In this document: positions 1-51,303 of the stretch, piece after piece
Numbering within the stretch: position 1 is the stretch's first letter
Layout of the letters: each line of letters begins with the position of its first letter
Assembly (NCBI GenBank): GCA_965202585.1
Contig: OZ241826.1
Location: 44,702,001-44,766,000, forward strand
Direction: 5' to 3'
Length of the DNA: 64,000 bases
From: Thalia democratica
Taxonomy: Eukaryota
Program-made: the position numbers and the translations under genes
The notes under the pieces: model-generated
Seen by the model: the letters and a program-made list of their open reading frames with translations, nothing else
Database searches by the model: none
Told to the model about the DNA's origin: nothing

Positions 1-1853
1 GTTGTACAAAGCAACAAGGTACCATTTTCCATCAAAACGCTTACAAAACAGAGATGTACCGGGATCTTGCTGTAGAAAATATAAATTAACAAACACTATT
101 AATTCTTTATTTAACAGCTTTATAACTTACAGCGAAAGAAGTGTCCTTTAGACTTTGATACCCACTCGTTAAAAAGTATTTTTTCACATCAGTACCTATT
201 TTTTATACTTAGTTTTACAAGTTTATACTAATGCTTTATATTTTCAACTAGTTTAATAAACACTAAATTGGACTTTTAAATTCTTTCTTTCATCAAAAAA
301 TTATTCTTATCTAGACAAAAGCTTCTTTTTTTACTTTATTATATAGATATTTATGGTTTGAAAAACATATAAACTTTTTTTTTAAATACATACCTAATTT
401 TTTAGTAATCTAATCCTATATTTAAACTGGTAAAACAATTATAGAAAAAATTTGAGTTCAATTTTCGTTAGTATTTTTTCAAAACAAATAAATCACACAA
501 AATTATAAAAATCAATAGTTTAAAATGCTGTTAGATAAAAAAAGTTTAACCTGAAGTATTATTCCATCTGTCTAAATCTTGAGTACATAGCCTTTCTTTC
601 ATTGCGTCTTGTACTTGAAGAGAGCACCAATGCTTCACCCAAGTGCTAAACGAAGACTTGACATTTATGTACTGCTCGTGTAGCTTCCAATTACTGATTT
701 CTCCTTCATCAAATCTTAAAAAGTTTGTTGTTCAAAAACAAACTAGATTAACTGTATTAGTTAAATGTACGTTTGTTAGTTTCAAATTATATTTTTTACT
801 TAAAGACTTAAAATAATATAGCTAAAACTCAATTCTTATACAAAAAAATCAGTGTTTTACTAAAATCATACTTACACTTGATGATGTCCGACGACTACAC
901 AGTTCGAACCGTCGCTTTCTCCAAAAAAGAACAAATCTGAATTTTCTTCAAACTTTCGATAGCTGTTCCTCACGCAGGCTACTTCTCTTTCCAGGTTTTC
1001 AAAGACGTTATTTTCAACGCTGTCGTACATCCAATAACCTTCTTCCTCGTAAAAATCCGAAAACTCGTCTTCGGTTACTTCAATCTCTTCAGAAGGCGCC
1101 AAAGCAGATTCGGTCGAGCGCATTTTCAGCTTGAGCAGCGCGACGTCGTGGGTCCATCGGTAAAAATGGTCGTCGTCTTTCAGGCCCCGGTCTTTCTTCT
1201 CGTGGTTGGGGTGCACCACCACGTTTTCCACGTCTATTTTCTCGTCCTCTTCGGTCTTCCCGGAGGCGAATGTGATGTAGTAGACAGGAGGTTCCTCTTC
1301 TTTTTTGTCGATTTTAACTTTTTCTCCTCCGACATTGTTTGAATCAGGAATTTCTACTCGTTGGCTGCCGATTGATTCTTCGTTTTTCTGAATTTGATTC
1401 AGTCTGCTGGATAAGTAGTCTGAAAGTTTTAAGTAATCTTTTTGAGTAAAAATCATTATTTGCATTAAAGCCTAAAAATACTTTAGTATTATAGTTTAAT
1501 TAAGTCCTTGTTGTATTAGAAATAATAAAACATTAAATAGAATAGTAGATACAGAATTGATCAGTGATATACATCTTAACAGAAAATAACTGAACTTAAG
1601 TTAATTTATTTTTAACAAGTATTTCATTATCGTGCTTAATAGTAAACTCACCATGTAAAGGGTACAAAGTATTCTCATTTTTTATTTGATTATGCTGCAT
1701 CAAGAATTCTGATTGGGCGAGGCAGTGAGCCGGGCAAATCACCCAATTAACATCGAGCAAAACCACAGTGCACAGAAACAAGGAAGAAAAACTTTCGTTT
1801 CCTTTCAAGAACAATTTACCGATCCAAGGCCAATTGGTTGGTGAAGTATGGTG
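1..1853 (-). other. Protease domain 2: catalytically dead serine protease homologue
   Basis: NWPWIG, LFLCTVVLLDVNWVICPAHC (His), HDVALLKL (Asp), but GDSGGPL reads QDPGTSL followed by FCKRFDGKWYLVAL. No R|IVGG activation site. Confidence 0.85.
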
Positions 1854-4800
1854 CTTAATAAAAAAAGATTAGACATGTTTTTTTTCCTTATTTATAAATT
1901 AACTAATACTTTATTAGTACTTCTAAAGAACAGTCTAACCCTGATTAGTTCAACTGCTTAAAATTTATTTTGACATTAAACTAAACAAAAATAATTCAAG
2001 CTAATACATTTGTAAAACTTTTCAAAAAAAAAAAAACTAAAGAACATTGTGAGTAAACTACATCAGGAGTAAAAAATGTTTTTGGTTTAAATACTTTTTA
2101 ATTAACTTTTGTCAAAAAATTACCGGAGCTACGTTAAGTTCTTCGTTTATGCTATCTAGTTCACTTCTACCACCACATTTTTCATTGAGGGTTTCAAACA
2201 AGCTTTCTTCTCTGTTTTTAAAAGTTGAACACTGACTTTCGTCAGCACCTCCAAAACAATCCACTTTACCATCGCATATTATGTCATCAAAACTTTTCAC
2301 GTGAGGTTTTACATTGCAAACTATGTGATGGCTCGTACATATAAAGTCTTTTACGTCTACGTTTTCCGTTGAAACTTCTGAAACGTTATTTAATACTATT
2401 AAATGAGTTTTAAGACTAAAAAGTTTTAACTTATAAGAATAAGTTATACTCATAATTGTGCTTTTCTTAAGAAAGTTGTTCATACAAAATTGTTTATAAT
2501 GCTTATAAAACACTTATTTCATTCGTTCTAGTACTTAAAAATGTGTAACCTTGATTACACAAATGCTGTTTTACTGAAATTCTTTCACCACACTCTATTC
2601 TATTGGCACATGTGTTTATTACTTCTCCACAAACTTCACTTGGATAACAGACTGTAATTATTTCATGTAAAGTAACTTTTATAAGAACTTTTATAACTTC
2701 AAAGCAAATTAAGAAAACTAAAACATTAAAGTATAAATACTTAATTTAAACAAAGATTGAGAAAGTTGAAGCTTAACTTTTGTATCTTTTTTATTTGTAC
2801 AAAAGTTATCAAAAGTAATTTTTAATTAAAAAGATGTTAAGATCTGATATTTTTTTACTAAGAAACTTAATTACTTTTACTATAGTTGCCTAGTTAATGG
2901 CATTATCATTTTAAACGATAAAAAGTCAAAGTTTATAAAAATATACGAAGATAAGACTAACAACCGTTTTCAGAAAATTGACTTTCACAAAATATTTGAC
3001 TGCTGCGTACGGTGCACTCTTCAGAACATTTTCCTTGCGTGATTTTTATGTCATCAATTGCAATATCACTATGAAAATCGTAACCTCTAACTCCCTCAAA
3101 AATAACCTAAAGTTGTAAGTTTAGAAAAGATACAAGAAAATTGTGTTTAAGTATTGTTAGGCAAGATATAATTTGTACTTTAAAGTTTTTGTGAGGTTGA
3201 ATCTCAACAGATGCCAGTTTCCATTTTCCGTCCGCATGTAGGCGCTGTGGTCCATACTTACTCCAAACCAAGTAAAGCTGATTGCTAAAAATATTGTGGT
3301 TGTTTAGTTTATGTAGTATTTTTTTAATTGAAGATTAACGATTTCTACATCTTAACGTGGGTATCACCAAATTAAAAGTTATGTCTATGTTTTGTTATAA
3401 GCAAAAGTCGGCGTAAATAGCAGGATTTAGTATTTTATTCTAACATTTTTTTCACATTATTCTATCGTTTGTTCAAATTTAGCTCCTTGAAAACTTTTTT
3501 TGTTTATCTTTCTAAAAAACTAATTTAAATTGTATCTTAAAAATAAAACTTAAATAACGTTATCTTTTATTTTTTGTACTTATTCTTATTTGTTGAACTT
3601 TCCATTGTAACTTGTTAAGTACATAAAGTAATTTTTATTCGACAGTTAACTTTAAAACTTCATTTTAAAAAGGTTAATGTATATAAAATTGAACAAAAAA
3701 ACAAATAAAGTTCTAATTAGATTATCCGAAAAAAAGTCACGCAAAAGAATCCAATTTTTTAGAATATTTTTCTTTTTCTGTTTTTTTATATCACTTTATG
3801 TATAAAAAAGTAACTGTAAAAATTTTTAAGACAAAAAGTACTGGGAGTTTTATTTATTTTAATGAAGAAGTTTATACCAACGTTAACATTTTAAACTTTC
3901 TTAAACTTTTTTGTATTTTTCGTAATTTCAATATTATCTTAACATAAAGCATAAAAAAATTTCAAGTACAAAAGTTAACTTTATCGAAAAATTTAAACTT
4001 ATGAAAAATACTATAGGTTTTTTAACCATTCTATTAAGAAAAATTTATTAAACTAATAATAAACTTACGTTTCTAAACTCAAAACAGATCAAAGTTGCAC
4101 GTAAAACCTCATCAAAAGTATACTTTTACGATAGGTTAAAAACCTCAGTAGTATAGCAACTATAGTATCAGTTTTATGTATTTAAGCCGCTTAAGCTTAA
4201 AGATAAAATTATAAAACAGCTGTGGACAACAGTATGTTTGAAGAAGTATGATTGATGTTGAATAAGTTTCAAAATAAAAGCAGACTTTAAAAGAATTAAA
4301 TATGTATTCAATTCAAACCCTAGATAAACGATTTCACTGTGCATACTAGTAAGTTTTTCAATAAGATTACTTCTTTGCAGCTTAAATAAATAAAGTGTCT
4401 GAAATTAATTAAAAATATTTTTTGTTTCCTTGACCAATTAGTATTTATTTTTAAAGGTTTTATGAATTGTAAAACTATTGAAAATATACTATAGCAGGCA
4501 TATATGAAACATTTTACTTAAAGTTCAATAAAAAAAAAAGAGAAGTATTAACATAAGGAAAATCACTTTCAAGTATTTGTGTAATGCTAAACTTTTTTCT
4601 TATTAAAATGCTAATTTAATTATTTAACATCAGTGCACTGCTACACAAGCTTAATTTATTGAACAAAATAAATATCGACGCTCATAAACCTATTTTGAGA
4701 TAAAGAAAATTGGCATTAAAAAACTAATCTTCAAAAAATAAAAACATGCAAAAAATGATAAAAAATAGTAACAATTGTTTTTATAAATCAAATAATGTTT

Positions 4801-7800
4801 GGCTAGCCTACATTTTACATATAATAAGTTGAAAAAAGAATACCTCCATAAGTAACGACATAGTAAACTTGTCGTTATTCTCATGAATCAATGTCAACAT
4901 TTTATAGATAGTTTTCTATATTATCCTACTAAGTAGTTTTTGTCCATAAACAGAAAAAAAATTTGTGAAAAGGACACTGTATCAGATTATAATAAAGATT
5001 GTTCATACTACATGCGATGAGTAGGAAAGCTTAACTATTTTTTGCTTTAGTACGATTGACAGTAAAAATATCTTTGCTAAACTTGGTAGTCTACAAGTTT
5101 TAAAAAGTATTTGTGGCTTATTACTGATGTGTATAAATTTAGTTGTTAAGTATTAGATTTGCTGCACAGTTGGAATTTTTATATTACATTTTTATTTATA
5201 TTTAGTTATTTATTTTATAATACACTTTAAATATAGTGTATTGACTAGAGCCTTGTAGACGTGCTGTTAAAGAACTGGTGTATTCCATGAATTTTTTTTT
5301 AGTTTTTTCGAGTTAAAAAGCTGTGTATATTTGTTTATTAATTTTTTTTAAATATAAAGTTTCAAACTTTTACTTATGACAGTATTCGTACTTTTTATTA
5401 GATATTTTTTTATTAATTTCGTGTTAACTTAATTTTTTTATATCTAGTTTAAATCAATTTTAAGCCTTTATTGTTTAAATTTTGTTTTAAACACAGAATT
5501 TACTATTTAAAACCATATAGTTTTTTTTTTTGCTTCAAAATACTATTATAACCGTCATATTTCTAAAATTCCCATCTACAATTAGATTAAGCTTAATAAA
5601 CAAATCAATCAAAGTGGCCACAGAAATACATACAAATTATAAAAATACAGCTGAAGTTTAAAAAATTACAACATGTGTATTTGATGAATTAAAAAAAGTT
5701 TAAGTTGCTGAAACTTTTAACTTGTTTTTACATCTAAATCAAACTTTTCAAGATGGATAAGCTGTGCATGTCGCATTTTAATAGAAAATTTTAAAGTCAA
5801 TTAATTTAACTTTGCGAAATAGGGTTTAGTAACAAAAAAACTTTTTTGTACCTTAATGTTAAAAGATTTTCTATATCATGTAAAGGTTGTCGATAGAACG
5901 TTATTCACTTGACGTCTACACTTTAGTAGTAGTTGTAAATTGGCAGTTAAGTTTCATTAAAAAAATACCTTTAAAAATGTTAAACAAAAACTCTAACTTT
6001 AAAATTATTAGGATAAAAAAAATTTAAAGCAAAGCTTGTATTTAATACAAAGTTCTCACTTCAAATCTTCGTTTGGCAGCGAAACCCCGAGACCGTGTCT
6101 GTTAACGAAATCAGCACCTTCGTACCAACCTTCTTCCGCTGTGAAGTTGTCACGTGACACCATTTGAACGAGCACGTTGAGGTAGCCGATGCTCCTCCCG
6201 TACATGTCGTACGCGAACGTGAGGCAGACCTTCTCACCGCTGTTGTGAGGTAACAGAGGGGTCGCGACGCGCGCGCTGTCCCCACTGTTCCAAGGGTAAG
6301 ACGTTTCCAAGTACAAGTAAGAACCTGCAGGTGTTTTATGTCCTATATATTAGTATTTCATATAAATAAAGCTTAGAGCTCAACACAAACAGCTTTTTGT
6401 TTTTGACTTGAACTACAAATAAGAACCGTTAGATCTCTTTTTTTTTCAAACGTAGTGAGTCAAAAAACCTTTGTTAAACATAAAGTCTAGTATTAATTTT
6501 TTAGACAAGTAATTTTTTTTTAGTAAAAAACAATTATACTGACGTATTGACTCAATAAAACTTAATACCTCTTTTTAAACTTGTCGTATAAGTCTTTAGA
6601 AAAGTCTACAGTTCTAAAACTAATTAACACCTCAAATGTTTGCAGCACTTGTAGACTAAATTATAAAAACTTTCTTTAGACCTGTTTTGTATCAAAAACT
6701 TCCATATAACCTTTTTCTTGTCCAGACGCGTCTCTCCTCGGTCCAGTGTTTTGAGTGAACGTGGGACCTTGATGAAGCCACCAAGTGTAGCCTCTTGTAG
6801 AATATTTGTCATTGTTTTCCTTCATGTCGCAAATTCCGTTGGAAAAGTCGCATTCAAACATTGACACTTGTTTCTCTTGGCGCTTAATACCTCTTACAGT
6901 TGCCAAAAACCCTAACAATTTCTTTATGTGAACAAAAAACTTTGATAACACAACATAAATACGAACCTTTTTTAGTAATGAGCTCGTCTGAAAAAAACTT
7001 TACGACAAGAATATTTTCTTCTGAAATGTAAACTGAGTCCATGACGTTAAGGTTGTCGCAGAACTTTCCATGTAGAATGGCAAAGTCGTCGTTGGACTTG
7101 TGACTGTACACTTGAATGTAGTCGTACTCGCAAGAAAGGTGTCGCTCAAGCTGCAGCACTTTAAACTCGAGATGAACCTGAAGTTTAACCCGAGGGTCAC
7201 GAAAAAAAAAGCTAATTTGTATTGTACAAATGGTTACTGTTTATTGAACGACAAAATAATTAGCTCTAAGTATTTGGTCCTAGGTCCTGGTAAATTAAAA
7301 GACCTTTCGGTCATGTAGTCGCGCACAACGATACCTTTTGACGTCTTGTCCAGGACCTTTATATTTGATACAAAACTAGATACACATACAAGTAAAATAG
7401 TAGTTCTTGAAATAATCACAAAGTGTTACTAATTAATAATACTATCTAATTATGATTGTGTTTCTAATGACTAACTTTGAAACCTTCAGGAGCAACTATT
7501 CTCCATGTGCATTTGGTTGCTAATGGATAGTTTTCAGGATAGCGTGGTGACTTAATGAAAACCTGGTTTTTAGAGTCGTGTACTTCAAAAGTGTCTTTGC
7601 ACGACGCCTCTATTGTTACGTCATTGACATCAGCGTCTTTATAGTCTTCGTAGTCATTAGAGCTTTTCAATTTTTCTATAAATGTAAAAAACGTATCTAA
7701 TTTAAAAAACAAAAAGTATAGTGTAGTGTAAGCATTTAAAAAGGACAATATTTATTACTATAAAGTAATTTTAGTGTTAAATATTTTTCTATACATACTT

Positions 7801-10800
7801 ATTTTGTGTAAATCGTTTGAGTTATGTTTCTTTTACATATAAAATACAAAACACTGCAACAATTAAACTGAAAAATGAAATAAAACATTAACATTATCTT
7901 TTTTTTAAATGACTGTAGATGAAAAATTCTAGAGTAAAAAAATATTATTAAAACAATCTACTACTATTTACTAGTTTAATTTCACAAACTTTGTGCAACA
8001 TTGTGTTTATTTCCCGCCATTTGTTCCGCTTTGTTTTCATTAGAAGTAAACCAATTAGGATAAAGAGATTGCAAGTTTGATACTGCATAGATAACTTGTC
8101 CGCTTGATGGCGTTGTTTCAGGCAAAACAACTTATAAAAGTTTAAAAGTTGGTATGGAGATCTTCGATTAGTTTTAAATAGAGTAACCTGATTACGAACT
8201 TAGACTACAATACAAAAATGAGAACTCGACAAACGCGAACTGTCAAGTAGGAAAGTTTTTATTTATAATACATTAAACCTTAACTTCCGCAAACAATTAT
8301 GTTTTTTAAACTCGTCAATCTTATTTAATTTTTATTAAAATTCATGTTATTCGGAAAGTTTCAACCCGTTTTGTTAACAACAAAAAGAACATGCTTGCCC
8401 CAAACGAGCTACTATAAGAAAAAAATTCAACACTATTTAGTTATGGTATTAAGTATTAAGTTTTAAAATAAACAATAAAAGTTCTCCGTTTTCGCAGATA
8501 AAGAGGGAGACAAATTATTAAGATTTCATTAATAATTCTAAATATAAAACGTTGATTTTGCCCCAACGGACTCTCCAGTTGTAATTTAAAGTTTATTAAT
8601 TAAATTAAGTGCTTAGTTCTAAATAAATTTGAATCGCGATGTTCTCTCATTTTTGTAAACAAATAAAAGTTAATATGATTTTTAGCATATTTATTTTTAA
8701 TTATGGTTTAGCTTGAAGGGACTCAATGATAAAAGAATCATATACATTTATAGGGCATTCAATATGGACATATTCATAACCAGTCACGAAGTGTTAAATA
8801 TATTTGAAGAACATACTATGTCTATTCATATTTTTACCTAATCTTGTTACATTTTGTTTATTCTACATTTAGAACCGTTCAACTCGGTTAAAGTATACAA
8901 ATTTTTTTTATTCATGTCAAGTTAGAAATTTTTAAAATGTTCAGATTAGAAGATAAAGCGCATTTTTATCACTAAGTTTTTGACTCAGAAGTGTAAATTC
9001 AACCGGCAACAAAGCTTAAGTTGTTAGCGATGAAATATAAAGCAATAATTTTGCAAAAATTAGAATATACCTTTTTAAATGAACAAAAGTACTTTAGAAT
9101 AAAACTTCGCTTACTTGGCATTATTTCTTGTTTTTTATAAGGCTTGTAATCTGAAGTTTTCTCGTCAAATTGCTCAATGAAACCTAAATCCTCTAATCCT
9201 GATGCTTCATCTTCAATTAAAGGTTTAGACATGTCAAATACCGAATCTAAAACAGTTTTTTAGTACTGATATTATTAAAAACATCACAGTTAAACATAAA
9301 TAAAAATGTTTGTACAAATAATACCCTCAGTTTTTAATACAATATAATTTTATTTGACTTATGCCTCAAACAACTCGTTTTAATTTTTGACTATAAACTT
9401 TTAACATCCAATAAAGAGTATTTAAGACTTATTTGTTACTCATAATCAACAAACCGTATACAGGTTGTATTTTGATGTCAAATTCGTCAGCTCCATTGTT
9501 GTTAATTACAAACCAGTATGTGAGTTGTATGTCGAACGGCGTGAGTGCCGTATCGTTGCAGTATATCCATACGTCGTTGGGTTTTTCCTCTTTACCATAA
9601 AAATTTGGTTTTTTAAATCTAATTGAACTCGTATAAAAATAAATTAAGGTTAGTCTTTAAGTTTAAGCTTCGTATATAAATATATATGTACTACTCTATA
9701 TACATTGCATATACTGTAGTATAGTAACTATACAAATGATATTTTTTTAAAACAAAAATATTGTACTTTTTCTGATTTCAACAATGAAAAATTACCTATT
9801 TTATAACAAAATTTTTTTTTCAGATTAAGATATTCCTAGACTACAAAAGAAGTTAAAAATAAATGGATTATCATGTTAAGAATATTAGATAAACTTTACC
9901 TAATTTTTGCCTCAAATTTATTTTGTAAAAATAAATGATCCTACGAAAAAACGCTTTACAAATACAAAAAAAAGTAAACATAGTACTATACCGTTGTCGC
10001 TAGTTCTAACTATTCTCCACTGGCCTGATGTTTCATGATAAAATAGTTTATGTTGAATATCAGTCTTGTTTGGTTTATTCTGTAGGCATACAAAATGTTG
10101 TGAAGTATATTATTATTTTGAACTTTTTCAGGTTTAACTAAAAAATAAAAATTACTTAAATCATTTAAATGTGAAAATACTTGGGTATAAGATGGTCGTT
10201 GCCCGAAGTTAGTTCCATCATAATCGTAAGTTCCGATAAATAGGTCTATTTTACTGTTAGTCGGGTAGTAAAACGAAATTAAATTTTCAGGTATGCTTTT
10301 TAGTCTGTGTTCCTCTAGCGTTATTGAATGGTCGGGACCTATCAATTACGTTTAAAGTATCAGCGTCAATTTATTTAAGTTAGTAGGTTTAGGAACTTTG
10401 AAAAACTGTGTATATTGATTGTATTTGAGAGTTGAAGAACATGGGGAAAACGTTTAACATGCTTTAAATTTTTTACGGTTTTTAAGATATTAAGAAAAAA
10501 TTATTAAGCTTTTTATATACTAAAAATTGTCATTAATAAAAAAAAAAATTGATAACTAATAATTTTTCTACTAAAGTTTAATAACTCTTATGTTTTAAAA
10601 TAAAATATTAACTAGACGAATTAAAACTCTTTCTTAATGTAAAAACGAAATATTAAAACATTAAACAGTAAAAAAAGGCGTCTTGTTAAGAAACCTTCGA
10701 AGTCGTAAGTTGCACCCGTAATACTAAAAGTAGCAAAAAATCCAGATGAAACGACACTCCAATTTGATTCAAAAATTATTACAGCCGAGCCAGTAATTCC

Positions 10801-22800: not shown

Positions 22801-25800
22801 CTGAAGCAACTAAGTATTTTAAAAATTAAGGCGGTGTATTGCTTTATCGTGATAACTGACCTTCCAGAGCAACGTCAAACGAGCTTATCGAGGTTATTTC
22901 CGAAATTCCATGCAGCAATTTCTCAGTTTTAGTCTCCGACGCGGTGTCGAAAACAATCAAGCTGTTGTACATGGAGTTCAGCCAAATAAGCTTCTTACCG
23001 ATTGAAGTTATGAAAGTAGGTGACATTTCCGGCTGGTCAATTTCGCTTGACACTATAACTGTTTTATTACTTCCGTCTGACCTTTGAAATTTTAGCTTAA
23101 TAAGTAATTTTTTACGTTTTGGTTAATCTTAAAAAGTAGGAAGCTAAAAGCTTTTTCATAATGTTACAAGCGACTTAAAGCTGACAATATATATAAATAC
23201 CTATATAAAAAGTACGCTCTTTTAGCTTCTACAATAGCGTCATACTAGCTTAATAGTATATTTTTACCACTTTTTTAGGATTTCAATAAGATTAACTAAA
23301 AGAACTTTTTACAAAGTTTAAATTAAGGTAAACAAAAGTGCAATAAATTTATTTTTAACACTTTTTCATTTAATATTTGTTGTTGTACCTCATGGAATGA
23401 ACTTCACTTGTTTGAAAATCAATCCAATAAAGTTTTCTCAACTTGGAACAGAACGTCAGCGCAAAGTACCTTCTGTTTTTATTTTTCAACAAAATTACCC
23501 TGTTTTCTCCGTCAAGATCGCTTCTTTCTATTTTACCATTCATATCGCTCCAGAACAAATACCTAAAATGTTAAACACTGTAAACAATCATAACAACTAA
23601 AGTTTGTTAGGCTTTTCAATGAGAACCAAACAAAATATTTTTACTTGTAATTTACAAAAATAAATTAAATACTTTTCATAAAAGAAGCTAATTATATACT
23701 CAGTTAGTGTTTCTTAGTTTGCAGAGATATTAAAATGATACTTAAAATTTTTCATCTTTAAAACCTTCCAAAAGGATCTACAGCCAACGTAACAACGTTT
23801 TCCATGTCATTTTTAATCAAGTTTTTGTTGATGTACTTAGTTTTGATTTTGCTCGAGCTTTCAGTCAGTATTTTAAGACTCAAAACTCCGACAGTCTTGG
23901 CTTGCACGTCCGACCAGTAGAGGTTGTGGTCGAGACTGTCTATTGCAAGAGCCACTGGACGAAAAAGACCTAAATAAAATTTTCTTCGTGATACTCTTAA
24001 AACTGTTTGCTTAAATTAAAGAGTACAAAAGTTTACTGTGAACAAGTTTCTGTTTCTAAGAAATTTTTAAATGTGCTTTTAATATAGATTAAAATGACAT
24101 ATTTATCATGAGGTAATGAGAAAGTAAAACCACTTCAACACCATCAAAGTAAACGATAGCCACGAAAATTTATGAATTGACAATTATTTAATTGAGCTTG
24201 CGAAACTTACAAGTATATGATTTTTATTTGATAAATTAGTATAAAATTACTTTCAACTTTTTTTCATAACAGTAAATTTCAATGCTGTTTTCTATATTTT
24301 TAAAACTGCATATATATTCAGTAGTTATGTTTTATACCCTACTACTGTTTTTCGGTACTATTGAGATTTTTCTCAGCGTTATAAAGTTAACAAGATAAAA
24401 TTAAATGCTAGTTAGTTAAACGACTTCATTATTTTTCATTTCATTATAAACACTTTTACAGTTTTGAGAATCTCAGATTGTTTACAAACAAAGTGCATCT
24501 TTCGCACCTGACACGAGAAACATCGAAGAAGTTTCGTTTTTTTCGTCCAACGTAGTCGACCTTATGGAAGTCGTCGACCGATCGATCCAGATAATGAAGT
24601 TTTTTGTGCCGTCATTGTGCAAAACGGAGCTCACAACACCGCTCGGCACGTCCACCAGTTTCTGGAAAGTTTTCTTTGAATAAGTGTTTGTTTGCATTTA
24701 CTGTCATGATGCTTATAAGAAAGATGTGCAAAAAAAAAAAACTCAAAACGATTGCTTTTTGTGGTTTTACTTTAAAAAGGTAAAAGGTCACACTCGTTTA
24801 TTATTTGATGAAAATATAAGTAATGGGTTTATGTTGTTTAATTTTTCTAAGTATTTAAATTGTAAAAGCAAACTCCAAACTTTTTAGTAATTTCTGTATC
24901 TATTTTTACTTTAGTATGTCATGTTTATTTTTTTTTCATGTAACAAAAATAAAATTATTTTCAAAAGTATCAAAAGCGACAAATATTAATATTAAAAAAA
25001 ACATTAGAAATTATAAGTACATGAAAAATTATTTATTAGCCTTCTTACAACTCAGCTAATTTTTTACTTGGTTTTTAATCTGTAGCAGCTTTTGTTATGT
25101 AATTAAAAATAGTTTTTTCTAGTTATGTTGAAACAAAGAAAGTAATTTTATAAAAACTAAAAAAAAACAAACATTCAAGCCGCTTTCTTGGTCAAGTTCA
25201 AAAGGCTCAGTGAGGTTTTTATAAACAGTTTGTGTGTTCAAATTGTCAAGTTTATAAGAAAATATACCACCAGACCCAGATATTAACAGTGTTCCTAAAA
25301 CAAAAGCATAGTATAAGTTTCAATTATGTGTTAAGTACTTACAAATTTTTAATTTATGAGAACACCAACAAGATGTTTAGACTTTATACTGGTATTATGA
25401 TTTTTTAAATGTTAGTATATTTTTTTATTTTGATAGAAAATAAAGCTGTCTTATACTTTTAAGTTTGACATTTTAATTCAAAGCTATAAAAGTATTTCTA
25501 TGTTGTTCATAAAAGTCTTGTCAATCTGAAAAATAGGTTTTTAACCACAATGTTCTCACTTTCAAATGCTTTTAAATTGCTTATCATTGGTACAGAACTC
25601 TAAGCTTATTACCTGCGGAATTCCCTTCGCTCTGATTAACTCGAGTTTGCGGCGTCTCCATGCTGATGACGTTGAACGATGACGTGTGCACGAAAACTCG
25701 CATGTTGTGGGTTGCGTCATCAACCCGAAACGTACAGTTGTATTGCGAGGAAGTTTCGTCATCGGCTACGCTTTTTGCCTTCATGCGTTTGGTGATTGGT

Positions 25801-28800
25801 TTCCTTCAGAAAAAAATCATTTGTAAGTAGTATTTTTTGAAGCAATGTTTGTTAACGTTTAAAAAAAAGTAAACACATTTTGTTCTAAAACTAAAATATA
25901 AAAAATATTAAGTTTTAGAACAGTTTTTTGAAATAAATAAACGTTAAGCTTTAAAAACGTAAAAGAAACAGTTCTTAATAGTTTGAATATTTTAGGGAAA
26001 TAGCTGCGGTTTCAAAGTCGCTATGGAAAATTTATCAAATTACATTTCATTTCCGACTTGCTGACACCTGTCACTTAAATAACATATAAAAAACTTTGAT
26101 GTTTTACTCAGACTACTTTTAAACCAAAAAAAATTGAATGTTAAACTAGCTTTATTTATTGAATATATGTATAATAAAATAGATAACTTATAGATGTAAT
26201 TTAACTTTATTAAATGTGCTCTATGTTTTCAACGTACCTTTTTAGGTCATCTTTTAAAACTATGACAAATGAGTCGTATATTCCTGTTTTAGGTGCTTGC
26301 CACTCGACAAGTACAGTCAGTTCGTCAGTTTTAGATGCTTTCAGGTTTCGTACTGAATCTGGAGCTGTTGAATGAGCAACAGTTTAAATATTTAGTTATC
26401 TCATTACTTTTATCGTTTAAAATACTTTATAAAAAATTGCTCAAAAATCTATTTTACATATGTAGTGATTATTATCAGTTCTTTAAGAACAGTGTACAAG
26501 CTGCTTAATTATAACCATGTAATCAACAAAACCACTTAAGCTGAAATATATGTATTCAAACTATTTTTTAAGCTAACCAATAACTAGATTTGTTCTTGAC
26601 TTTTTTGATTTCAGTTGACGAGGTGCTTTAGATTCCACAAAAATCTGATACCGGTAACCTAGTTTCAAATTAGTCAAAAATCCGGATATTTCATGTTTGG
26701 AAGTAGTTGAAGCAGCTATTTGTACTGGTTTACTTTTGGGGTTTGTTGTAATCTTTAATTATTTTAAAACCAATAAGAAACATAAAGCATTACAGAAACT
26801 TTATAAAAGGTTTTAAGGAAAACTAACGTAATATGAAGTTATACTGTTATCTCCCAGCCAATTTACTTGAGCTATCTGAAAATTAAATAAAAATAAAATA
26901 AAATAAGACCAGCTTTTCTACATATTAACTTACATTTTTTCCATCTTTTAATTGGTTTGCTTTAACACTTTTCGGATTAGTAGACTCTGTTTTATACATT
27001 TGTTAAGCAAACAAAATCAAATCAGTTTTCTTTAAAAACAATTTGTAATAATTTCAAAACCTGTATTGATAACAAAACTTGTTGGTTGTAACTTTTTCGT
27101 CCTTGAGTACGGATGAATTGTAATTTTGTAAAACGTCGAAGGCTTTAGATTTCTGAAAATGTGCTGTCGACTTGTCGTTGAAATTGACAGAGAACTCCAA
27201 ATTTTTTCACCAACTGTCGGGTTGATTTCCAGTTTGTAGGTCCACCAAACAGTTGTAGAGTTTGCTACCCAAGGTGGAAACCAGTACAACTTTATGCTCG
27301 ATTGAGTGTTCCAAAACCTTATGAGTCTAAGCCTGGATGACTTTTCAGCTGAAATGTTTATAGCAAAATTTAAAAGCAATGTTTTATTTTTTAGTTTACA
27401 ATGTTTTCTAAAGTAAGAAGCAAAATATTATTACAATAATAATAACAACTGTTTATCAAAACTACTTTCATACTTTGTTTTAAGGTGTTTTGTATGAGCC
27501 CGTTAGATTTTTTTATAGCGTCAACATCCGATAGGAAATGTCTGTTTTGTGATTCTTCGCAAAGTGTCGCGGAAATGACGTTTTTACCTTCAACTTTCAT
27601 TTGCTCCAAGTTTTTGTACATCACTATATTTTGCTAAAAGTGTGTTTGCAAATATACTTAAGTACTTTGAGCTATAATCATTTTTTAAACTATCTTATTA
27701 CCTTGCAACTAAGATTGTTAGTATTTTATGGATATATATTTATATAAAAAAGTTTAGGAATTAGCAACTTACCAAGTACATAATTTTCTACACTATTACA
27801 CATTCACATCATCATTAAAATAATCAATAAATACATGAAAAGTTAATTATTTTAATTTTCGAGAATTAGAAACAAAAACATAAAAATACATATGTAAACT
27901 AAGAAAAATACTTATATGAAGTCAAAATAGATACTAAAATATAGTAATAATTAAAACTATCTTTTATCTGTCAGTTTAATTCATCTCTTTTTTATGGCTT
28001 CTTTTCAAAAGTTCAATAATAGAAAGAAGGGTAAAACGTAATGCTATAAAAATCAATTAAATGCTATCGCTTTTATTTCAAATTGTAACTCTTCTTATTA
28101 ACTGGAATAACTTTAGTCTAAAAATAAGTGAGATAGTATACTAAAAAGAGCAAACATAATAAATTTTCAAATGACATACTTAAAAGTATGAATACTAGCA
28201 ACTAATACCTTTTTGCAATTTGGTTGTTTTAATTTTGAATGACCCAGCAGTTTAAGATCTACTCTTATATTTCAGTTGTAAAAAAGATTAGATGATAAAG
28301 CCTAAGTTATACAATAAATAATAATAATAAGGATACATGAAATCGATTGAGAATAATAAACAGAAGTACAATATAAAAGAGTTATACCATGTATGGCGGA
28401 GACACGAACTTGGTGAGCTGCGATCTCGTTTTCGCCTTCCTCATTGACAATGACATCACTCTGATGTAGGAGTCTTGCAACTGTTTCGACTTGTATAAAT
28501 CTTGAGACTCTCCTCCATTTAAAATAATTAGAACTGAAGGCCTATCATTTTTTAATTAGGATTTGTTTAACAAATATAGTTGATTTTCAACTTTCAGCCT
28601 TTAAAATAAGCTGAATGCAAAGTCTAATAACTATAGATGTACTTTACAAATAAATGTACAATATGATGTATCTTTTTTTTTTACTATACAAATAGATGTA
28701 TATCAATTATGTTTACAAGTCTTTAATTGGAAAATATAAAAAGATACTATACAAAATAAAATAAAAAAATTAAATTTTTACGTTAAACATGGTAATCAAT

Positions 28801-30878
28801 ACAATATTTTTTGTTTTAATTTACACGAAGTATTTTTAAGTTATAGCATAATTAGTTTACTATGGTAATTTTGATTAGTCCTTTTAAATAACTTATTTAG
28901 ACTTACGTTTTATAAACTTGTATAAAAATTTTCAGTTTAAAGTTCTTAAACAAATTTCAAACATTACTTTAATTATTTTTCAACTATTTTTTAGTGTTAA
29001 ATAACTTTTTTCTCTACTTTTACCGCAAGTGTACATTACTATTTTTCAAAACGACTGAAGCAATTTATCTTGTAGGTATCATAACAGATCAATTTAGTTT
29101 TGATTATTAATACTAATTTGATAAATTTAGTTGTATATAAAGCATAATCTGTTTAAATTAGTCTTTTATAAACCACTAGTAACAAACTTTTTTGTATGTG
29201 TTAACTTGCTTCAATAGGATATTAGATATACTTACATTATACATAAATATGAATATCTTTGAGTTGTTTATAATAACATATATAAATATTATCAGTAGAT
29301 AAATAACTTTATTTCTACTTACATAGTTTACGAACTATAAAGAAATAAAACTTGCCTATCATTTGTTGAATTTAATTCTTTTGGAAAGTTTTTGAACTTT
29401 TGAAAAAATCTTCCTTTATTTTTGTTGTCAATTTTTAAACTGTTTATTTTATACACCAGTTCAATTTTACTGTAGTTAAACGTTTCAATGTCTAGATGTT
29501 TTGTGAGCTCATAACCATATCTAAAAACAGTTAATCTAATAGTTTAACTTTGTAACTGTTTTTAATTAGCTTTTATTTTTTAACTTTTTTTTTAGTTTTT
29601 TTTTTTAACAGAAAGTTTTACATAAACAACCTTGAAACAAAAGTTAGTGTAATATTAAAGGTAATAAGCCTTCTTGATTTAATAGTTTAAACTACATTCT
29701 TTTAACCAAAACTTAGCATTACACATGTTTTTATGCAGCAACTTTTCTATTAATTACCAAGTAGGTGGTTTAACAAGGTTACACCTTTAAAAGTTGCTTT
29801 TCTTGTTGCAAAAACAAACATGTGTAGACGGTGCGTAAACATTTATGCTATTACTAAATTAAAACGTTAATAACTAGAATACTAGATGGTGCGCTAATCT
29901 GTTTTTGACCATGTAGTTAACACAAAACAGTGCTAAAAAGTTCAACCCTAGCTTGCTCTTAAAGTAAAGACTTGTAAGTTCTTACTATAATTAAGATAAA
30001 GTTGAAAGACTAGTAGATTATGCATTGTAAAATTTTTTACAAGATGTTCTAATTTAACTGAAATCTTAAAACTAGTTTAAAGAATAACTAACGTGAAAAC
30101 GCATATTCGAGTTGATTGATAAACTGGAGTGGGCTTTACGAGATCTGAAGCTACACTTGCCAACAACTGCTTCAAATTTACAAAATCCTCGTTGGAAACA
30201 CTGTTGTCTATTGCAAACACAACCTCGAGGCTCAGGGATTGCAAGCAAGAGGACAACGTAAACTTCCCGCTGATGCGATCTACTAAGAAAAACGTTAGAA
30301 GGAACTGTAGAATGGTGTAAACTGATTTCATGTTTAAAAATAGTGATTCTAAGCTGTTTTAGTTTTGAAAATAACCATAAGTCTTCTTAAATTTTGAAAG
30401 TAATTGAGTTTTTCTGATGTTATTCAAAAAGTGTCATCTACACGACTACCTATTTATGTAAAAAAAAGTACAATTAAGTGTTCTATTCACACCCGAAAAA
30501 CTAAAATATAAGCACACATTATTGATTTCTATCATTATACCGTGAAATCAAAACGCTTAGAGCTTTCAGTAATTAACTTTTTTAAGTATGAGTGTTTATA
30601 TGGGTTGCTTTGGTGTAAAATTTTTTTAAAGAAGTTTATTAATTTTTTGTAGAAATAGCACATAAATTACTTTTTTACATAAAATCATTTCGTAATAAAC
30701 GTATAAAAACGTGAAGAAATTAAAAAAAGCTATATTAATTAGGGCTATAACAACAATAAATCTAACAAACTAATGCAATTGAGCAAACCATACTCAAATC
30801 AGTTTACAAGTGTCATAAATATAAAAATATTTGAATAAAACGTTTGCAGCAATAAACAAAACCAAGCAAACAAAACAT
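1..30878 (-). CDS. Giant multidomain mosaic serine protease (enteropeptidase/corin/nudel-like), about 63 exons, >3,400 aa, 3' end outside the window
   Basis: Hand-spliced exons with compatible phases, 5' to 3': 30878-30842, 30282-30093, 29520-29356, 28541-28388, 27633-27474, 27348-27061, 26986-26934, 26875-26828, 26752-26578, 26364-26238, 25803-25613, 25294-25173, 24673-24508, 23969-23765, 23562-23389, 23081-22861, 22683-22554, 22476-22294, 21526-21357, 20507-20417, 20180-20024, 19697-19562, 19496-19378 (or 19339), 19229-19069, 18751-18612, 17484-17181, 16976-16854, 16510-16347, 16242-16002, 15746-15523, 15150-14985, 14775-14553, 14461-14301, 14184-14007, 13696-13516, 13241-13161, 13010-12868, 12695-12520, 12393-12266, 12100-11913, 11733-11574, 11359-11245, 11179-11025, 10811-10695, 10338-10181, 10079-9987, 9940-9900, 9618-9455, 9246-9115, 8130-7990, 7675-7476, 7177-6967, 6911-6711, 6324-6060, 3284-3179, 3106-2965, 2651-2550, 2395-2124, 1853-1652, 1419-876, 714-551, 195-131, 69-<1. 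Sum is about 10,260 nt with no in-frame stop. The start exon (MFCLLGFVYCCK, signal-like) is tentative. Confidence 0.8.
2124..7675 (-). other. Second CUB, fifth MAM and LDLa modules
   Basis: IKSPRYPENYPLATKCTWRIVAP...CEYDYIQVY...FSDELITKKGF (CUB); CDFSNGIC...TGPRRD, GSYLYLETS, CLTFAYDMYGRSIG, VIFEGVRG..SDIAIDDI (MAM); CDGKVDCFGGADESQC (LDLa). Confidence 0.9.
7268..7358. repeat. Short dispersed repeat with hairpins (second copy 47858-47948)
   Basis: Shared AAGTATTTGGTCCT.GG..CTGGT and ACGT.TTGTCC. A 9-bp inverted repeat at 7282-7290 / 7350-7358 encloses the GACC-TTTC-GGTC hairpin. Confidence 0.5.
10695..11359 (-). other. CUB domain C-terminal to protease 1
   Basis: CSKTFFNVSQGYIASPGWPEPYDNDIRCEYRI...VELHFETYSLE..DFVHVYEG...FESNWSVVSSGFFATF. 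Confidence 0.9.
11574..13010 (-). other. Protease domain 1: S1 serine protease with intact triad
   Basis: CG...VILR|IIGGQDSKPRHWPWMASLQ; HQCGGTVISNKFVLTVAHC (His57); WDVALVEL (Asp102); PICLP; MLCAG; GDSGGPLIC (Ser195); SWSTGC; SWISQ. Confidence 0.95.
13161..14775 (-). other. CUB-like, LDLa and TMPRSS-type SRCR domains upstream of protease 1
   Basis: CGG...ACLWRL...LTVYDG (CUB-like); CDGKRGCLDGSDEKNC (LDLa); ISEDFANSACQQQGF (SRCR as in hepsin/TMPRSS/enteropeptidase). Confidence 0.7.
14985..19496 (-). other. Three divergent MAM-like domains and an LDLa repeat
   Basis: Each starts with CDF/CEF/CTF (CDFDDLDSC, HCEFIGG, VCTFED). Partial MAM motifs: YVTHGTYLSVKLN..IWKT..NGWRNA, ALVDDITI, CVMVEY, IQISQIRV..RCP. 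Then CVVPEQLCDDINDCGDWSDE. Confidence 0.6.
19562..22476 (-). other. Two LDLa repeats and a canonical MAM domain
   Basis: [59 protein letters not shown]...DFDW...TGPSIDHT, GSYLYAEAT, FFYHMFGKNMGTL, GNQGFFWNKA, IILEATRG...GDIAIDDV. Confidence 0.9.
22554..25294 (-). other. LDL-receptor YWTD beta-propeller followed by an EGF-like cysteine module
   Basis: Blades FIIWID, GLFRPVALAIDSLDHNLYWSD, LAVDPFGRYLFWSD...KIERSDLDGENR, KLYWID, KLIWLN; then CSLPQACDDICIS. Confidence 0.85.
25613..27348 (-). other. Three fibronectin type III repeats
   Basis: SIKLYWFPP...FRNLKPSTFYKITIHPY; AQVNWLGDNSITSYY...LTNLKLGYRYQIFVES; APDSVRNLKASKTDELTVLVEWQAPKTGIYDSFVI. Confidence 0.8.
27474..30282 (-). other. vWA domain exons of the mosaic protease
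   Basis: LEVVFAIDNSVS (DxSxS intact), TRICVFTYG, PSVLIILNGGESQD (TDG becomes LNG), IRVMSLS, FVSPPYMQNIVMYKNL...SATLC follow the vWA strand and helix order. Confidence 0.75.
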
Positions 30879-37631: not shown

Positions 37632-37916
37632 CGTTGTATAAGTGATAAAAAAAAAGTATCTGTTTTAATTTTATTGATTAAGAAGAAAAACGAGTTTTAG
37701 TAAATTAAATAAATTCAACACTTAACTTCACAAATTTTTATTTGTTACTAAAAGATATAAAAGTATGTTGTACTCTAGCAGAAAAATTTCTAGGTTTAAT
37801 AAACTAAAAAGAAAACTGTTTTAAAAAAATGCGCGTTAACTGTTTTTAATATTTTTTAAGTTGTTTCTAGGTTACTACAAGTTTAAACAATAACTTGAAC
37901 TAAAGATGCTTACAAC

Positions 37917-51255: not shown

Positions 51256-51303
51256 ATAATAAATCTTTAAGCTCTAAAGATAAAGAACAAACAATAACCT
51301 ACT

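What the first reader, a model, noticed from the sequence alone, without database searches (positions are those of the whole stretch)
1..30878. A single >3,400-aa extracellular protein joining vWA, FN3, an LDLR propeller, five MAMs, CUBs, SRCR, an active protease and a dead protease
All ~62 junctions are phase-compatible, giving one continuous ORF. The MAM-LDLa-CUB-LDLa-SRCR-protease core resembles enteropeptidase/TMPRSS, and the central-active plus terminal-dead protease pair resembles Drosophila Nudel. I know of no characterised protein that adds vWA, 3xFN3 and a YWTD propeller in front. It could be a self-contained matrix-anchored proteolytic scaffold, for example in egg coat, tunic or gut (inference).
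Basis: partly seen in the sequence, partly recalled or inferred. Interest (0 to 1): 0.85.

Follow-up and report, generated by a model that had tools for sequence, protein, structure and literature searches.

The report
Giant secreted mosaic serine protease gene
A 30-kb, roughly 58-exon gene in this AT-rich marine animal genome most likely encodes one secreted protein of about 3,300 residues: sticky matrix-type modules, a working trypsin-like protease and a degenerate second protease; the combination is unusual but built from familiar parts, and it has not been confirmed by RNA.

Summary
The core observation holds. My curated minus-strand model runs from ATG 30331 to TAA 546-548. It has 58 exons, 57 introns (55 GT-AG, 2 GC-AG) and 3,303 codons, with no internal stop.

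Pfam on single-exon pieces confirms fn3, an LDLR YWTD repeat, LDLa, two canonical MAM domains, two CUBs, a complete active trypsin domain and the start of a second one.

- **Weakly supported:** vWA, SRCR and the CUB between two LDLa modules rest on weak hits or motifs only. I can support three MAMs, not five.
- **Gene end:** the gene ends inside the window rather than running off the left edge.
- **One gene (about 0.75):** many exons bridge neighbouring domains, domain-border introns match in phase, and no internal start with a signal peptide exists. Short contigs of a related species conserve four tested exons exactly between the predicted splice sites, under purifying selection. No RNA evidence could be obtained.
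- **Closest known:** the core matches the end of enteropeptidase (CUB-LDLa-SRCR-protease), but it is not an orthologue: no membrane anchor, Gly189, and a 1,150-residue C-terminal arm. Active-plus-degenerate protease pairs are known in Nudel and ascidian ovochymase.

Verdict: a new variant of a known kind, of moderate interest.

The parts
30272..30331 (-). Start codon (ATG at 30331) and a signal-peptide-like N-terminus (MKSVYTILQFLLTFFLV)
   Evidence: This is the first in-frame ATG after a stop. It is followed by a hydrophobic stretch and then the vWA-like DxSxS motif. The model has no other transmembrane-like segment.
27475..30226 (-). vWA-like domain, about 180 aa in 4 exons (30093-30331, 29356-29520 with a GC donor, 28460-28541, 27474-27633)
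   Evidence: It has the motif DNSVS (DxSxS) and LIILNGGESQD. Pfam VWA reaches only E 0.062, profile 102-154, on one exon. The frame was fixed by hand. Identity is probable but not proven.
25611..27346 (-). Three FN3 domains: FN3-1 in the single exon 27061-27348; FN3-2 in 26934-26959, 26828-26875 and 26578-26752; FN3-3 in 26238-26364 and 25613-25803
   Evidence: Pfam fn3 gives E 1.1e-6 for FN3-1 and E 0.026 for the first half of FN3-3. FN3-2 and the second half of FN3-3 are called by pattern only.
22862..25292 (-). YWTD (LDLR class B) beta-propeller, about 290 aa, six blade-like units
   Evidence: Pfam Ldl_recept_b gives E 1e-5 on 23373-23570. Five xW.D motifs (IWID, YWSD, FWSD, YWID, IWLN) recur at about 45-aa spacing.
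21508..22657 (-). Cys-rich EGF-like stretch followed by LDLa-1 and LDLa-2
   Evidence: Pfam Ldl_recept_a gives E 2.9e-12 with two stretches. Exons 22554-22716, 22294-22476 and 21357-21526 each carry parts of two neighbouring modules.
19617..21492 (-). MAM-1, canonical, in 4 exons
   Evidence: Pfam MAM profile positions 1-42, 75-134 and 123-157 fall on three successive exons. Against MAM-2 the pairwise z-score is 19.
17366..19604 (-). Short MAM-N-like motif (CDFDDLDSCGYE) followed by a TARSH_C domain (19069-19229, 18612-18751, and the start of 17181-17484)
Evidence: Pfam TARSH_C gives E 7e-15 (profile 39-80), 2e-4 (1-41) and 0.067 (92-126), colinear over three exons.
15092..17347 (-). Two divergent MAM-like modules: M3 (about 16423-17347) and M4 (about 15092-16401)
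   Evidence: M3 against MAM-1 gives z 4.6, reached by 1 of 400 shuffles. M4 shows no significant similarity and has only the CxFE...C start and a DDI-like end. Exon 16347-16510 carries the end of M3 and the start of M4.
12970..15070 (-). LDLa-3, CUB-like module, LDLa-4 and SRCR-like module (the enteropeptidase-type pre-protease core)
   Evidence: Ldl_recept_a gives E 2.3e-6 for LDLa-4 and E 0.084 for LDLa-3. SRCR_2 gives E 0.18, profile 14-66. The CUB-like module has motifs only and no hit. Bridging exons are 14985-15150, 14553-14775, 14007-14184 and 12868-13010.
11575..12927 (-). Active S1 (trypsin-fold) protease in 5 exons, with activation site VILR|IIGG
   Evidence: Pfam Trypsin hits four exons at E 1e-5 to 2e-12. 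The fifth, the activation-site exon 12868-13010, reaches only E 0.17 (profile 1-20). Motifs TVAHC, DVALVEL and GDSGGP are present, and PICLP holds the tether Cys. Residue 189 is Gly and residue 226 is Asp, by alignment to hepsin. In the relative this exon has omega 0.04.
10714..11327 (-). CUB-A in 3 exons, directly after the protease across a phase-1 intron (11574/11359)
   Evidence: Pfam CUB profile 1-25 (E 0.12) and 26-82 (E 1.6e-5) fall on successive exons. Against CUB-B the z-score is 9.
7602..10713 (-). Unknown beta-rich region and acidic linker (exons 10181-10338, 9992-10079, 9455-9589, 9115-9246, 7990-8130)
   Evidence: No family hit was found. Exons 9455-9589 (omega 0.04) and 9115-9246 (omega 0.43) lie side by side with conserved splice sites on a relative's contig. 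From the end of CUB-A (10695) to the start of CUB-B (7675) the frame is phase 1, and 9455-9589, 9115-9246 and 7990-8130 are each phase 1 to phase 1. Exons 9992-10079 and 7990-8130 are weak.
6889..7601 (-). CUB-B (7476-7675 and 6967-7177)
   Evidence: Pfam CUB gives E 1.6e-6 and 6.7e-11. The direct phase-0 join restores the CUB consensus.
3026..6858 (-). MAM-2, canonical, split by a 2.8-kb intron
   Evidence: Pfam MAM profile 1-51, 38-99 and 131-158 fall on exons 6711-6911, 6060-6342 and 2965-3106. Exon 6711-6911 carries the end of CUB-B and the start of this MAM.
2229..3025 (-). Cys-rich stretch and LDLa-5
   Evidence: Ldl_recept_a gives E 0.051 over profile 3-37. The motif CDGKVDCFGGADESQC is present.
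627..1853 (-). Second, degenerate S1-like domain (exons 1652-1853, 876-1419, 546-714) with a roughly 60-aa charged insert
   Evidence: Pfam Trypsin gives E 2.6e-5 on the first exon only. The second exon against protease 1 gives z of about 4; the third is not significant. There are no PDB hits. There is no R|IVGG (it reads NVAP|HHTS), and GDSGGP is replaced by GESDGS, or KESDGS in the relative. Omega is 0.14 and the splice sites are conserved.
335..626 (-). C-terminal tail, stop codon TAA 546-548 and polyadenylation-type signal AATAAA 335-340
   Evidence: Read directly from the sequence. No scoring exon lies further left.

Best explanation
This is one gene for a secreted modular serine-protease zymogen of about 3,300 residues with no membrane anchor.

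**Shown**
- A continuous 58-exon reading frame.
- A signal-peptide-like start.
- An intact catalytic triad and an Arg|Ile-Ile-Gly-Gly activation site in the central protease.
- Extracellular binding modules on both sides of that protease.
- A second protease-like domain that is conserved but strongly degenerate.

**Inferred mechanism**
1. The N-terminal arm (vWA-like, three FN3, YWTD propeller, LDLa, MAM, TARSH_C) fixes the protein to extracellular matrix or to a secreted structure.
2. An upstream trypsin-like enzyme, or the protein itself, cuts after the Arg. The heavy chain stays attached through the usual propeptide-to-Cys122 disulfide.
3. The CUB-like, LDLa and SRCR-like modules directly before the protease hold and present substrates, as they do in enteropeptidase.
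4. The C-terminal arm (CUB, unknown conserved domain, CUB, MAM, LDLa, pseudo-protease) stays in the same chain as the catalytic domain. It serves as a substrate- or inhibitor-binding exosite rather than a second enzyme.
5. The Gly189/Asp226 pocket suggests cleavage after basic residues, with altered selectivity.

The tissue and the substrate are unknown.
For: - **Continuous frame.** ATG 30331 to TAA 546-548 through 57 canonical introns. The exon set is stable to parameter changes, and the chain scores about 3 times the antisense or reversed controls.
- **Colinear Pfam coordinates across introns** for MAM-1, MAM-2, TARSH_C, CUB-A and Trypsin show that these introns lie inside domains.
- **Bridging exons.** At least ten exons carry the end of one module and the start of the next, from the EGF/LDLa region through the active protease and from CUB-B to the second protease.
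- **The three borders without a bridging exon.** Protease to CUB-A and CUB-A to the unknown region are phase-1 introns on both sides. Between the end of CUB-A and the start of CUB-B the frame stays phase 1 whichever of the intermediate exons 9455-9589, 9115-9246 and 7990-8130 (each phase 1 to phase 1) is included.
- **No alternative start.** No Met with a hydrophobic leader joins downstream exons without breaking a domain. There is no transmembrane segment.
- **Related species (TARA metagenome contigs).**
  - The active-protease exon is 89% identical (omega 0.04).
  - Conservation stops about 10 nt past the donor at 11573.
  - The read-through tails differ: 7 codons here, 28 there.
  - The pseudo-protease exon is conserved exactly from acceptor to donor, with omega 0.14.
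  - Two consecutive linker exons sit on one contig with conserved AG/GT borders and a diverged intron.
- **Nearest solved proteases:** hepsin, enteropeptidase, kallikrein and TMPRSS2.
- **Enteropeptidase clamp.** Its CUB2-LDLR2-SRCR modules clamp the peptidase domain (PMC9663175).
Against: - There is no RNA evidence of any kind. The public collections searched hold no transcript or annotated protein of this gene.
- Several exons in the N-terminal 500 residues and in the linker have weak coding scores and weak splice sites. I fixed some of them by domain logic, which is partly circular.
- vWA, SRCR, the central CUB and module M4 are not statistically supported.
- In most relatives the protease domain is the C-terminal end. 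The transcript could therefore end at 11554 by read-through (GLFLLNF, then stop), at least as an isoform.
- The function of each arm is inferred from what such modules do in other proteins.
- AlphaFold on the pseudo-protease exon gave no usable model (pLDDT 32).
Confidence: 0.62

Rival explanations
1. These are two or more neighbouring genes read as one. The first would encode a secreted protein that ends with the active protease (stop after read-through at 11551-11553). The second would encode the CUB...pseudo-protease part. Other possible breaks are after FN3-3 or after CUB-A. In tunicates the downstream unit could be an operon gene that receives a trans-spliced leader.
For: - In TTSP-type and enteropeptidase-type proteins the protease is C-terminal (PMC9663175).
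- No exon bridges protease to CUB-A, CUB-A to the unknown region, or FN3-3 to the propeller.
- Reading through the donor at 11573 reaches a stop after 7 codons.
- No RNA data exist.
Against: - The gap between protease and CUB-A is only 214 nt.
- The downstream part has no Met with a signal peptide that keeps its first domain intact. Its first in-model Met lies about 250 residues further on, yet all its modules are extracellular types.
- Both borders have matching phase-1 introns.
- The donor at 11573 is conserved in the relative, while the read-through tail is not.
Confidence: 0.2
2. This is one locus with alternative products. A short isoform would end at or near the active protease (enteropeptidase-like). 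A long isoform would include the C-terminal arm. Some weak symmetric exons (9992-10079, 7990-8130) would be cassette exons or not exons at all.
For: - Exons 9455-9589, 9115-9246 and 7990-8130 are each phase 1 to phase 1, and 10181-10338 with 9992-10079 are so as a pair. Skipping any of these units keeps the frame.
- Two of the linker exons have low coding and splice scores.
- A stop lies close behind the donor at 11573.
Against: - Nothing in the sequence requires this reading.
- The C-terminal exons are under purifying selection, so a long product is used.
- The question cannot be settled without RNA.
Confidence: 0.12
3. The model is partly an artefact. The exon chain would be forced through decaying or non-coding sequence, for example a degenerating C-terminal duplicate, or the region would be an assembly chimera.
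For: - A chain finder can repair the reading frame with spurious small exons. My first models did so.
- The second protease and several modules are very divergent.
Against: - With a penalty on short exons the chain needs no mini-exons.
- Controls score about 3-fold lower or worse: 433 antisense, 416 reversed and 89 shuffled, against 1315.
- Four tested exons, including the most divergent one, are conserved with omega 0.04-0.43 and intact frames in a second species.
- The window has no N runs.
Confidence: 0.05

Closest known systems
Enteropeptidase (TMPRSS15) and other type II transmembrane serine proteases (hepsin, TMPRSS2)
   Same: - The module order directly before the catalytic domain is CUB(-like), LDLa, SRCR(-like), S1 protease, with MAM-type modules further upstream.
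- The zymogen has an Arg/Lys|I-[IV]-G-G activation site and a Cys tether to the heavy chain.
- Enteropeptidase and hepsin are among the nearest solved protease sequences (PMC9663175).
   Different: - It has no N-terminal membrane anchor and no detected SEA domain; the start is signal-peptide-like instead.
- About 1,600 extra residues lie in front (vWA-like, FN3, YWTD propeller, TARSH_C).
- About 1,150 residues follow the protease.
- Residue 189 is Gly, with Asp at 226, instead of Asp189.
- The CUB and SRCR modules are too divergent for Pfam.
Drosophila Nudel (from my own knowledge of Hong and Hashimoto 1995; not checked in a paper here)
   Same: It is a very large secreted modular protein with LDLa repeats, a central active S1 protease and a second protease-like domain that is not expected to be catalytic.
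   Different: - As far as I recall, Nudel has no MAM, CUB, SRCR, vWA, FN3 or YWTD modules.
- No sequence relationship was tested.
- The resemblance is one of design, not of descent.
Ovochymase/oviductin polyproteases, including ascidian HrOvochymase
   Same: It is a secreted tunicate protein in which S1 protease domains are separated by CUB domains and the last protease domain lacks a typical catalytic triad (PMC9265791).
   Different: - HrOvochymase is described as signal peptide, protease, 2 CUB, protease, 3 CUB, degenerate protease.
- It has no MAM, LDLa, SRCR, vWA, FN3, propeller or TARSH_C.
- It has two active domains, whereas this protein has one.
MAM-plus-LDLa proteins (MALRD1/MAMDC4 type) and ABI3BP/TARSH (from my own knowledge)
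   Same: MAM modules alternate with LDLa modules, and FN3 domains occur together with a TARSH_C domain (Pfam PF21731 hit).
   Different: Those proteins carry no protease. Here these modules are only parts of a larger mosaic.

Membership tests
S1A chymotrypsin-fold serine proteases (central domain) | Trypsin-fold domain recognised by the family profile over its whole length | tested here: met
   Pfam Trypsin profile positions 70-220 fall on three successive exons at E 1e-5 to 2e-12. The His57 exon matches PDB proteases at E 2e-6. Profile positions 1-20 are hit at E 0.17.
S1A chymotrypsin-fold serine proteases (central domain) | Catalytic triad His57, Asp102, Ser195, and an activation cleavage site | tested here: met
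   The motifs TVAHC, DVALVEL, GDSGGP and VILR|IIGG are present in the spliced model. GDSGGP is conserved in the relative. Enzyme activity was not tested.
Enteropeptidase (TMPRSS15) orthologue | Type II membrane anchor followed by a SEA domain | tested here: not met
   The N-terminus is a short signal-peptide-like leader. No 19-residue hydrophobic segment lies outside the protease core. No SEA hit occurs on any exon piece.
Enteropeptidase (TMPRSS15) orthologue | Heavy chain LDLR-CUB-MAM-CUB-LDLR-SRCR ending in a C-terminal peptidase | tested here: not met
   Only the last three modules before the protease are in the same order, and two of them are weakly supported. The protease is followed by about 1,150 further residues.
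Enteropeptidase (TMPRSS15) orthologue | Asp189 at the base of the S1 pocket | tested here: not met
   Alignment to hepsin places Gly at 189. Asp is at 226 (PDVF), which is conserved in the relative.
Pseudo-protease (non-catalytic S1-like domain), C-terminal domain | Recognisable trypsin fold | tested here: inconclusive
   Pfam Trypsin gives E 2.6e-5 on the first exon only. The second exon against protease 1 gives z of about 4; the third is not significant. There are no PDB hits, and the AlphaFold model is unusable.
Pseudo-protease (non-catalytic S1-like domain), C-terminal domain | Loss of features needed for catalysis | tested here: inconclusive
   There is no R|IVGG site. GDSGGP is replaced by GESDGS (KESDGS in the relative), and Cys191 and Cys220 are absent. 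However, His57-type (PAHC) and Asp102-type (HDVALLKL) motifs and a possible Ser remain.
Nudel-like or ovochymase-like polyproteases | Common descent (orthology) with those proteins | not testable with these tools
   Full-length relatives could not be searched because a spliced protein cannot be handed to the search tools. The one exon searched against 1.84 billion proteins found only a close relative's exon.
MAM domain | Match to the family profile | tested here: met
   Two domains have colinear hits (E 1e-7 to 5e-11). The other three claimed copies give no hit. One of them is similar to MAM-1 (z 4.6).
von Willebrand factor type A domain | Match to the family profile, and a MIDAS motif | tested here: inconclusive
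   Pfam VWA gives E 0.062 (14 bits, cut-off 23.8) on one exon. DxSxS is present, but the TDG motif reads NGG.
TARSH_C (PF21731) | Match to the family profile | tested here: met
   E 7.1e-15 (56 bits, cut-off 27), with two weaker colinear pieces.

The most novel reading that the evidence does not exclude
A lineage-specific 'all-in-one' extracellular protease. An enteropeptidase-type clamp core with a relocated specificity acid sits in the middle of one 3,300-residue secreted chain. On one side is a matrix-anchoring arm and on the other a conserved pseudo-protease arm. It would act as the fixed initiator of an extracellular cleavage cascade in a pelagic tunicate, for example in gut, feeding mucus, tunic or egg coat. 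No counterpart of this architecture would exist in other animals.
Probability: 0.2. Interest if true: 0.6.

Novelty: new variant of a known kind. Interest (0 to 1): 0.4.

Why it matters
If the single transcript is real, the enteropeptidase-type pre-protease core (CUB-LDLa-SRCR-protease) exists outside vertebrates in a secreted protein without a membrane anchor, and it can carry large arms on both sides. That bears on how the vertebrate digestive-cascade initiator and the membrane-anchored proteases were assembled by exon shuffling.

It also adds a third, independent example of an active protease paired with a conserved degenerate one, after Nudel and ovochymase. This hints at a recurring use for pseudo-protease domains as binding modules.

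In practice it is a hard test case for annotating these AT-rich tunicate genomes: 58 exons, weak codon bias in places, and GC-AG introns. Without expression data or a substrate it remains a structural curiosity. Giant mosaic extracellular proteins are common in tunicates and other invertebrate deuterostomes.

Tried and rejected
1. **Full-length or annotated relatives.** An exhaustive HMMER search with the largest exon found only a 149-aa exon of a related species on TARA contigs, plus one low-complexity bacterial hit. Word-based searches are limited to 0.55-1.75 times the query length, so they returned only single exons. A JGI metagenome scan found nothing.
2. **Transcript evidence.** None of the hits spans a splice junction; all are genomic.
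3. **First gene models.** These contained spurious mini-exons that repaired the frame. I rejected them in favour of a model with a short-exon penalty and GC donors, followed by hand curation.
4. **Errors of the chain finder that I corrected:**
   - the wrong frame in the vWA exon;
   - a split FN3-1;
   - a truncated propeller exon;
   - a false exon at 7304-7356.
5. **Weak GBD_Hemicentin hit at 25587-25805.** Rejected; it is the second half of FN3-3.
6. **RAB3A-like_C, CoiA_C, BrxC and other hits at E 0.003-0.3.** Rejected as chance.
7. **PDB sequence searches.** Searches for the vWA exon, the central CUB-like exon and the last two pseudo-protease exons gave only chance hits.
8. **Protein-atlas look-ups.** Uninformative.
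9. **AlphaFold on the pseudo-protease exon.** Mean pLDDT 32, so no fold search was run.
10. **Salp transcriptome papers.** They mention none of the relevant protease names.
11. **Spliced protein.** I did not type it into any tool, so whole-domain Pfam and structure tests of vWA, SRCR, the central CUB and M4 were not possible.

Full report
**Setting.** The window is AT-rich (about 28% G+C) with no N runs. Earlier notes of this scan suggest a pelagic tunicate, probably a salp. I did not test that. The gene lies on the minus strand.

**Is the reading frame real?**

I built a splice-aware chain finder, using codon log-odds and donor and acceptor matrices retrained on confident exons.
- The first versions repaired the frame with tiny, implausible exons. 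I did not trust them.
- With GC donors allowed and a penalty on short exons, the best chain from ATG 30331 to TAA 546-548 has 59 exons and 3,231 codons, with no mini-exons.
- About 55 of these exons recur under all seven parameter sets.
- The same procedure scores 1315 on the sense strand, against 433 antisense, 416 reversed and 89 shuffled. Training on sense exons makes this control somewhat generous.

Domain logic exposed several errors, which I corrected by hand.
- vWA exon 2 ends in a GC donor (AG|GCAAGT) at 29356. This puts the next exon in the frame that reads RPSVLIILNGGESQD.
- FN3-1 is one exon, 27061-27348.
- A propeller exon extends to 23389.
- CUB-B is a direct phase-0 join of 7476-7675 to 6967-7177.

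The curated model has 58 exons, 57 introns (median 231 nt; 55 GT-AG and 2 GC-AG) and 3,303 codons, with no internal stop. The gene does not run off the left edge: it stops at 546-548, and AATAAA follows at 335-340.

**Which domains are really there?**

| Support | Domains | Evidence |
|---|---|---|
| Firm | fn3; Ldl_recept_b; Ldl_recept_a (three clear, two weak); two MAM domains; CUB-A and CUB-B; TARSH_C |. MAM profile coordinates are colinear across exons, in one case across a 2.8-kb intron.
| Firm | Central Trypsin domain | Four exons at E 1e-5 to 2e-12, plus the activation-site exon at E 0.17 |
| Firm | Start of a second Trypsin domain | First exon, E 2.6e-5 |
| Weak | VWA | E 0.062 plus a DxSxS motif |
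| Weak | SRCR_2 | E 0.18 |
| Weak | FN3-3 | E 0.026 |
| None | CUB-like module between LDLa-3 and LDLa-4 | Motifs only |
| None | Module M4 | Motifs only |
| Partial | Module M3 | Similar to MAM-1, z 4.6 |

So 'five MAMs' becomes two canonical, one divergent, one doubtful, and one short MAM-like motif in front of TARSH_C. Five xW.D motifs at regular spacing fit a six-bladed propeller. There is no transmembrane segment.

**The two proteases.**

The central protease:
- It has TVAHC, DVALVEL and GDSGGP, the site VILR|IIGG and the PICLP tether cysteine.
- Alignment to hepsin gives Gly189 and Asp226. This agrees with a separate note on this window.
- Its nearest solved relatives are hepsin, enteropeptidase, plasma kallikrein and TMPRSS2.

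The terminal domain:
- It keeps PAHC and HDVALLKL but has no activation site (it reads NVAP|HHTS).
- It has a charged insert of about 60 residues.
- GESDGS stands in place of GDSGGP (KESDGS in the relative).
- It lacks the 191-220 cysteines.
- Its last two exons match nothing in Pfam or the PDB.

'Degenerate and probably non-catalytic' is fair. 'Dead' is not proven.

**One gene or several?**

There is no RNA. The indirect evidence is as follows.
1. At least ten exons carry the end of one module and the start of the next. They tie together the EGF/LDLa region, MAM-1, TARSH_C, M3, M4, LDLa-3, the CUB-like module, LDLa-4, the SRCR-like module and the active protease. They likewise tie CUB-B, MAM-2, the Cys-rich stretch, LDLa-5 and protease 2.
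2. The borders without a bridging exon have matching phases. From the end of CUB-A to the start of CUB-B the frame is phase 1. Exons 9455-9589, 9115-9246 and 7990-8130 are each phase 1 to phase 1, and 10181-10338 with 9992-10079 are so as a pair. The frame therefore holds whichever of those units is used.
3. No Met with a hydrophobic leader can start a downstream protein without cutting a domain.
4. Short TARA Oceans metagenome contigs of a related species (dS about 1.4) support four exons.
   - The last exon of the active protease is 89% identical (omega 0.04). Conservation stops about 10 nt past the donor, and the read-through tails are unrelated: 7 codons here against 28 there.
   - The large pseudo-protease exon is conserved exactly from acceptor to donor (omega 0.14).
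   - One 928-nt contig holds two consecutive linker exons with conserved borders and a diverged, longer intron (omega 0.04 and 0.43).

The C-terminal arm is therefore functional coding sequence with no start of its own. I put a full-length transcript at about 0.75.

**Comparison with known proteins.**
- **Enteropeptidase** is TM-SEA-LDLR-CUB-MAM-CUB2-LDLR2-SRCR-peptidase, and CUB2-LDLR2-SRCR clamps the peptidase (PMC9663175). This protein shares that last stretch. It fails the defining anchor, the SEA domain, the C-terminal position of the protease and Asp189.
- **Ascidian ovochymase** is a polyprotease with CUB spacers and a last protease domain that lacks a typical triad (PMC9265791). It is a closer precedent than Nudel for the active-plus-degenerate pair.
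- **The front end.** I found no description of vWA, FN3, propeller and TARSH_C in front of such a core. An architecture search was not possible, so this is absence of evidence.

**Verdict.** This is a new variant of the known kind 'mosaic extracellular S1 protease'. Interest is moderate, because such mosaics are common in tunicates and nothing is known of expression or substrate.

Noticed in passing
window 28531-28552 and 29346-29367 (minus strand), the two ends of intron 2: The 814-nt intron 2 has the same 11 bases, AAATGATAG|GC, across both its donor and acceptor junctions, and it uses a GC donor. This looks like a target-site-type direct repeat, as left by intron gain through insertion, or like the junction copying that another note of this scan reported for this genome. 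It is the only intron of the 57 with such a repeat.
   Followed up: partly
window 19063-19068 and 29350-29355 (minus strand): Two of the 57 introns use GC-AG, each with the donor AG|GCAAGT. Gene finders that allow only GT donors put the vWA exons in the wrong frame.
   Followed up: partly
window 17366-19211 (minus strand): A TARSH_C domain (Pfam PF21731, E 7e-15), known from the matrix protein ABI3BP, sits inside this protease gene between MAM-type modules.
   Followed up: partly
window 9455-10338 (minus strand): An unknown beta-rich region of about 130 residues after CUB-A matches no family. Its exon 9455-9589 is among the two most conserved of the four tested against the relative (omega 0.04). 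It may be an undescribed domain.
   Followed up: partly
window 11574-12100 (minus strand): The active protease has Gly at 189 and Asp at 226. The PDVF motif is conserved in the related species. This agrees with a separate first-stage note on this window.
   Followed up: partly
window 37981-38109 and 39459-39639: There are two arrays of a 41-bp tandem repeat with a G+C-rich core (ATCCGGTTCCGGCCGG...), 3.1 and 4.4 copies, about 1.4 kb apart. They give long PDPD-rich open frames on both strands. They may be the ends of a mobile element.
   Followed up: no
window 51298-54846 (plus strand): A 1,183-codon open frame reads by eye (no search run) like RNA polymerase II subunit 2 and appears intronless, in a window where the neighbouring gene has 57 introns. 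Another first-stage note on this window also records it.
   Followed up: no
window about 33875-37664 (minus strand): Exons of what looks by eye (no search run) like a cytosolic sulfotransferase gene lie upstream of the protease gene on the same strand. About 3.5 kb separates its last exon from ATG 30331.
   Followed up: no
loci L001-L004 (TARA Oceans metagenome assemblies ERZ28655878 and ERZ27289397): Short contigs (0.6-0.9 kb) of a related species carry orthologous exons at 66-89% protein identity, with synonymous divergence near saturation. Such contigs can be used to check exon borders across this genome.
   Followed up: yes
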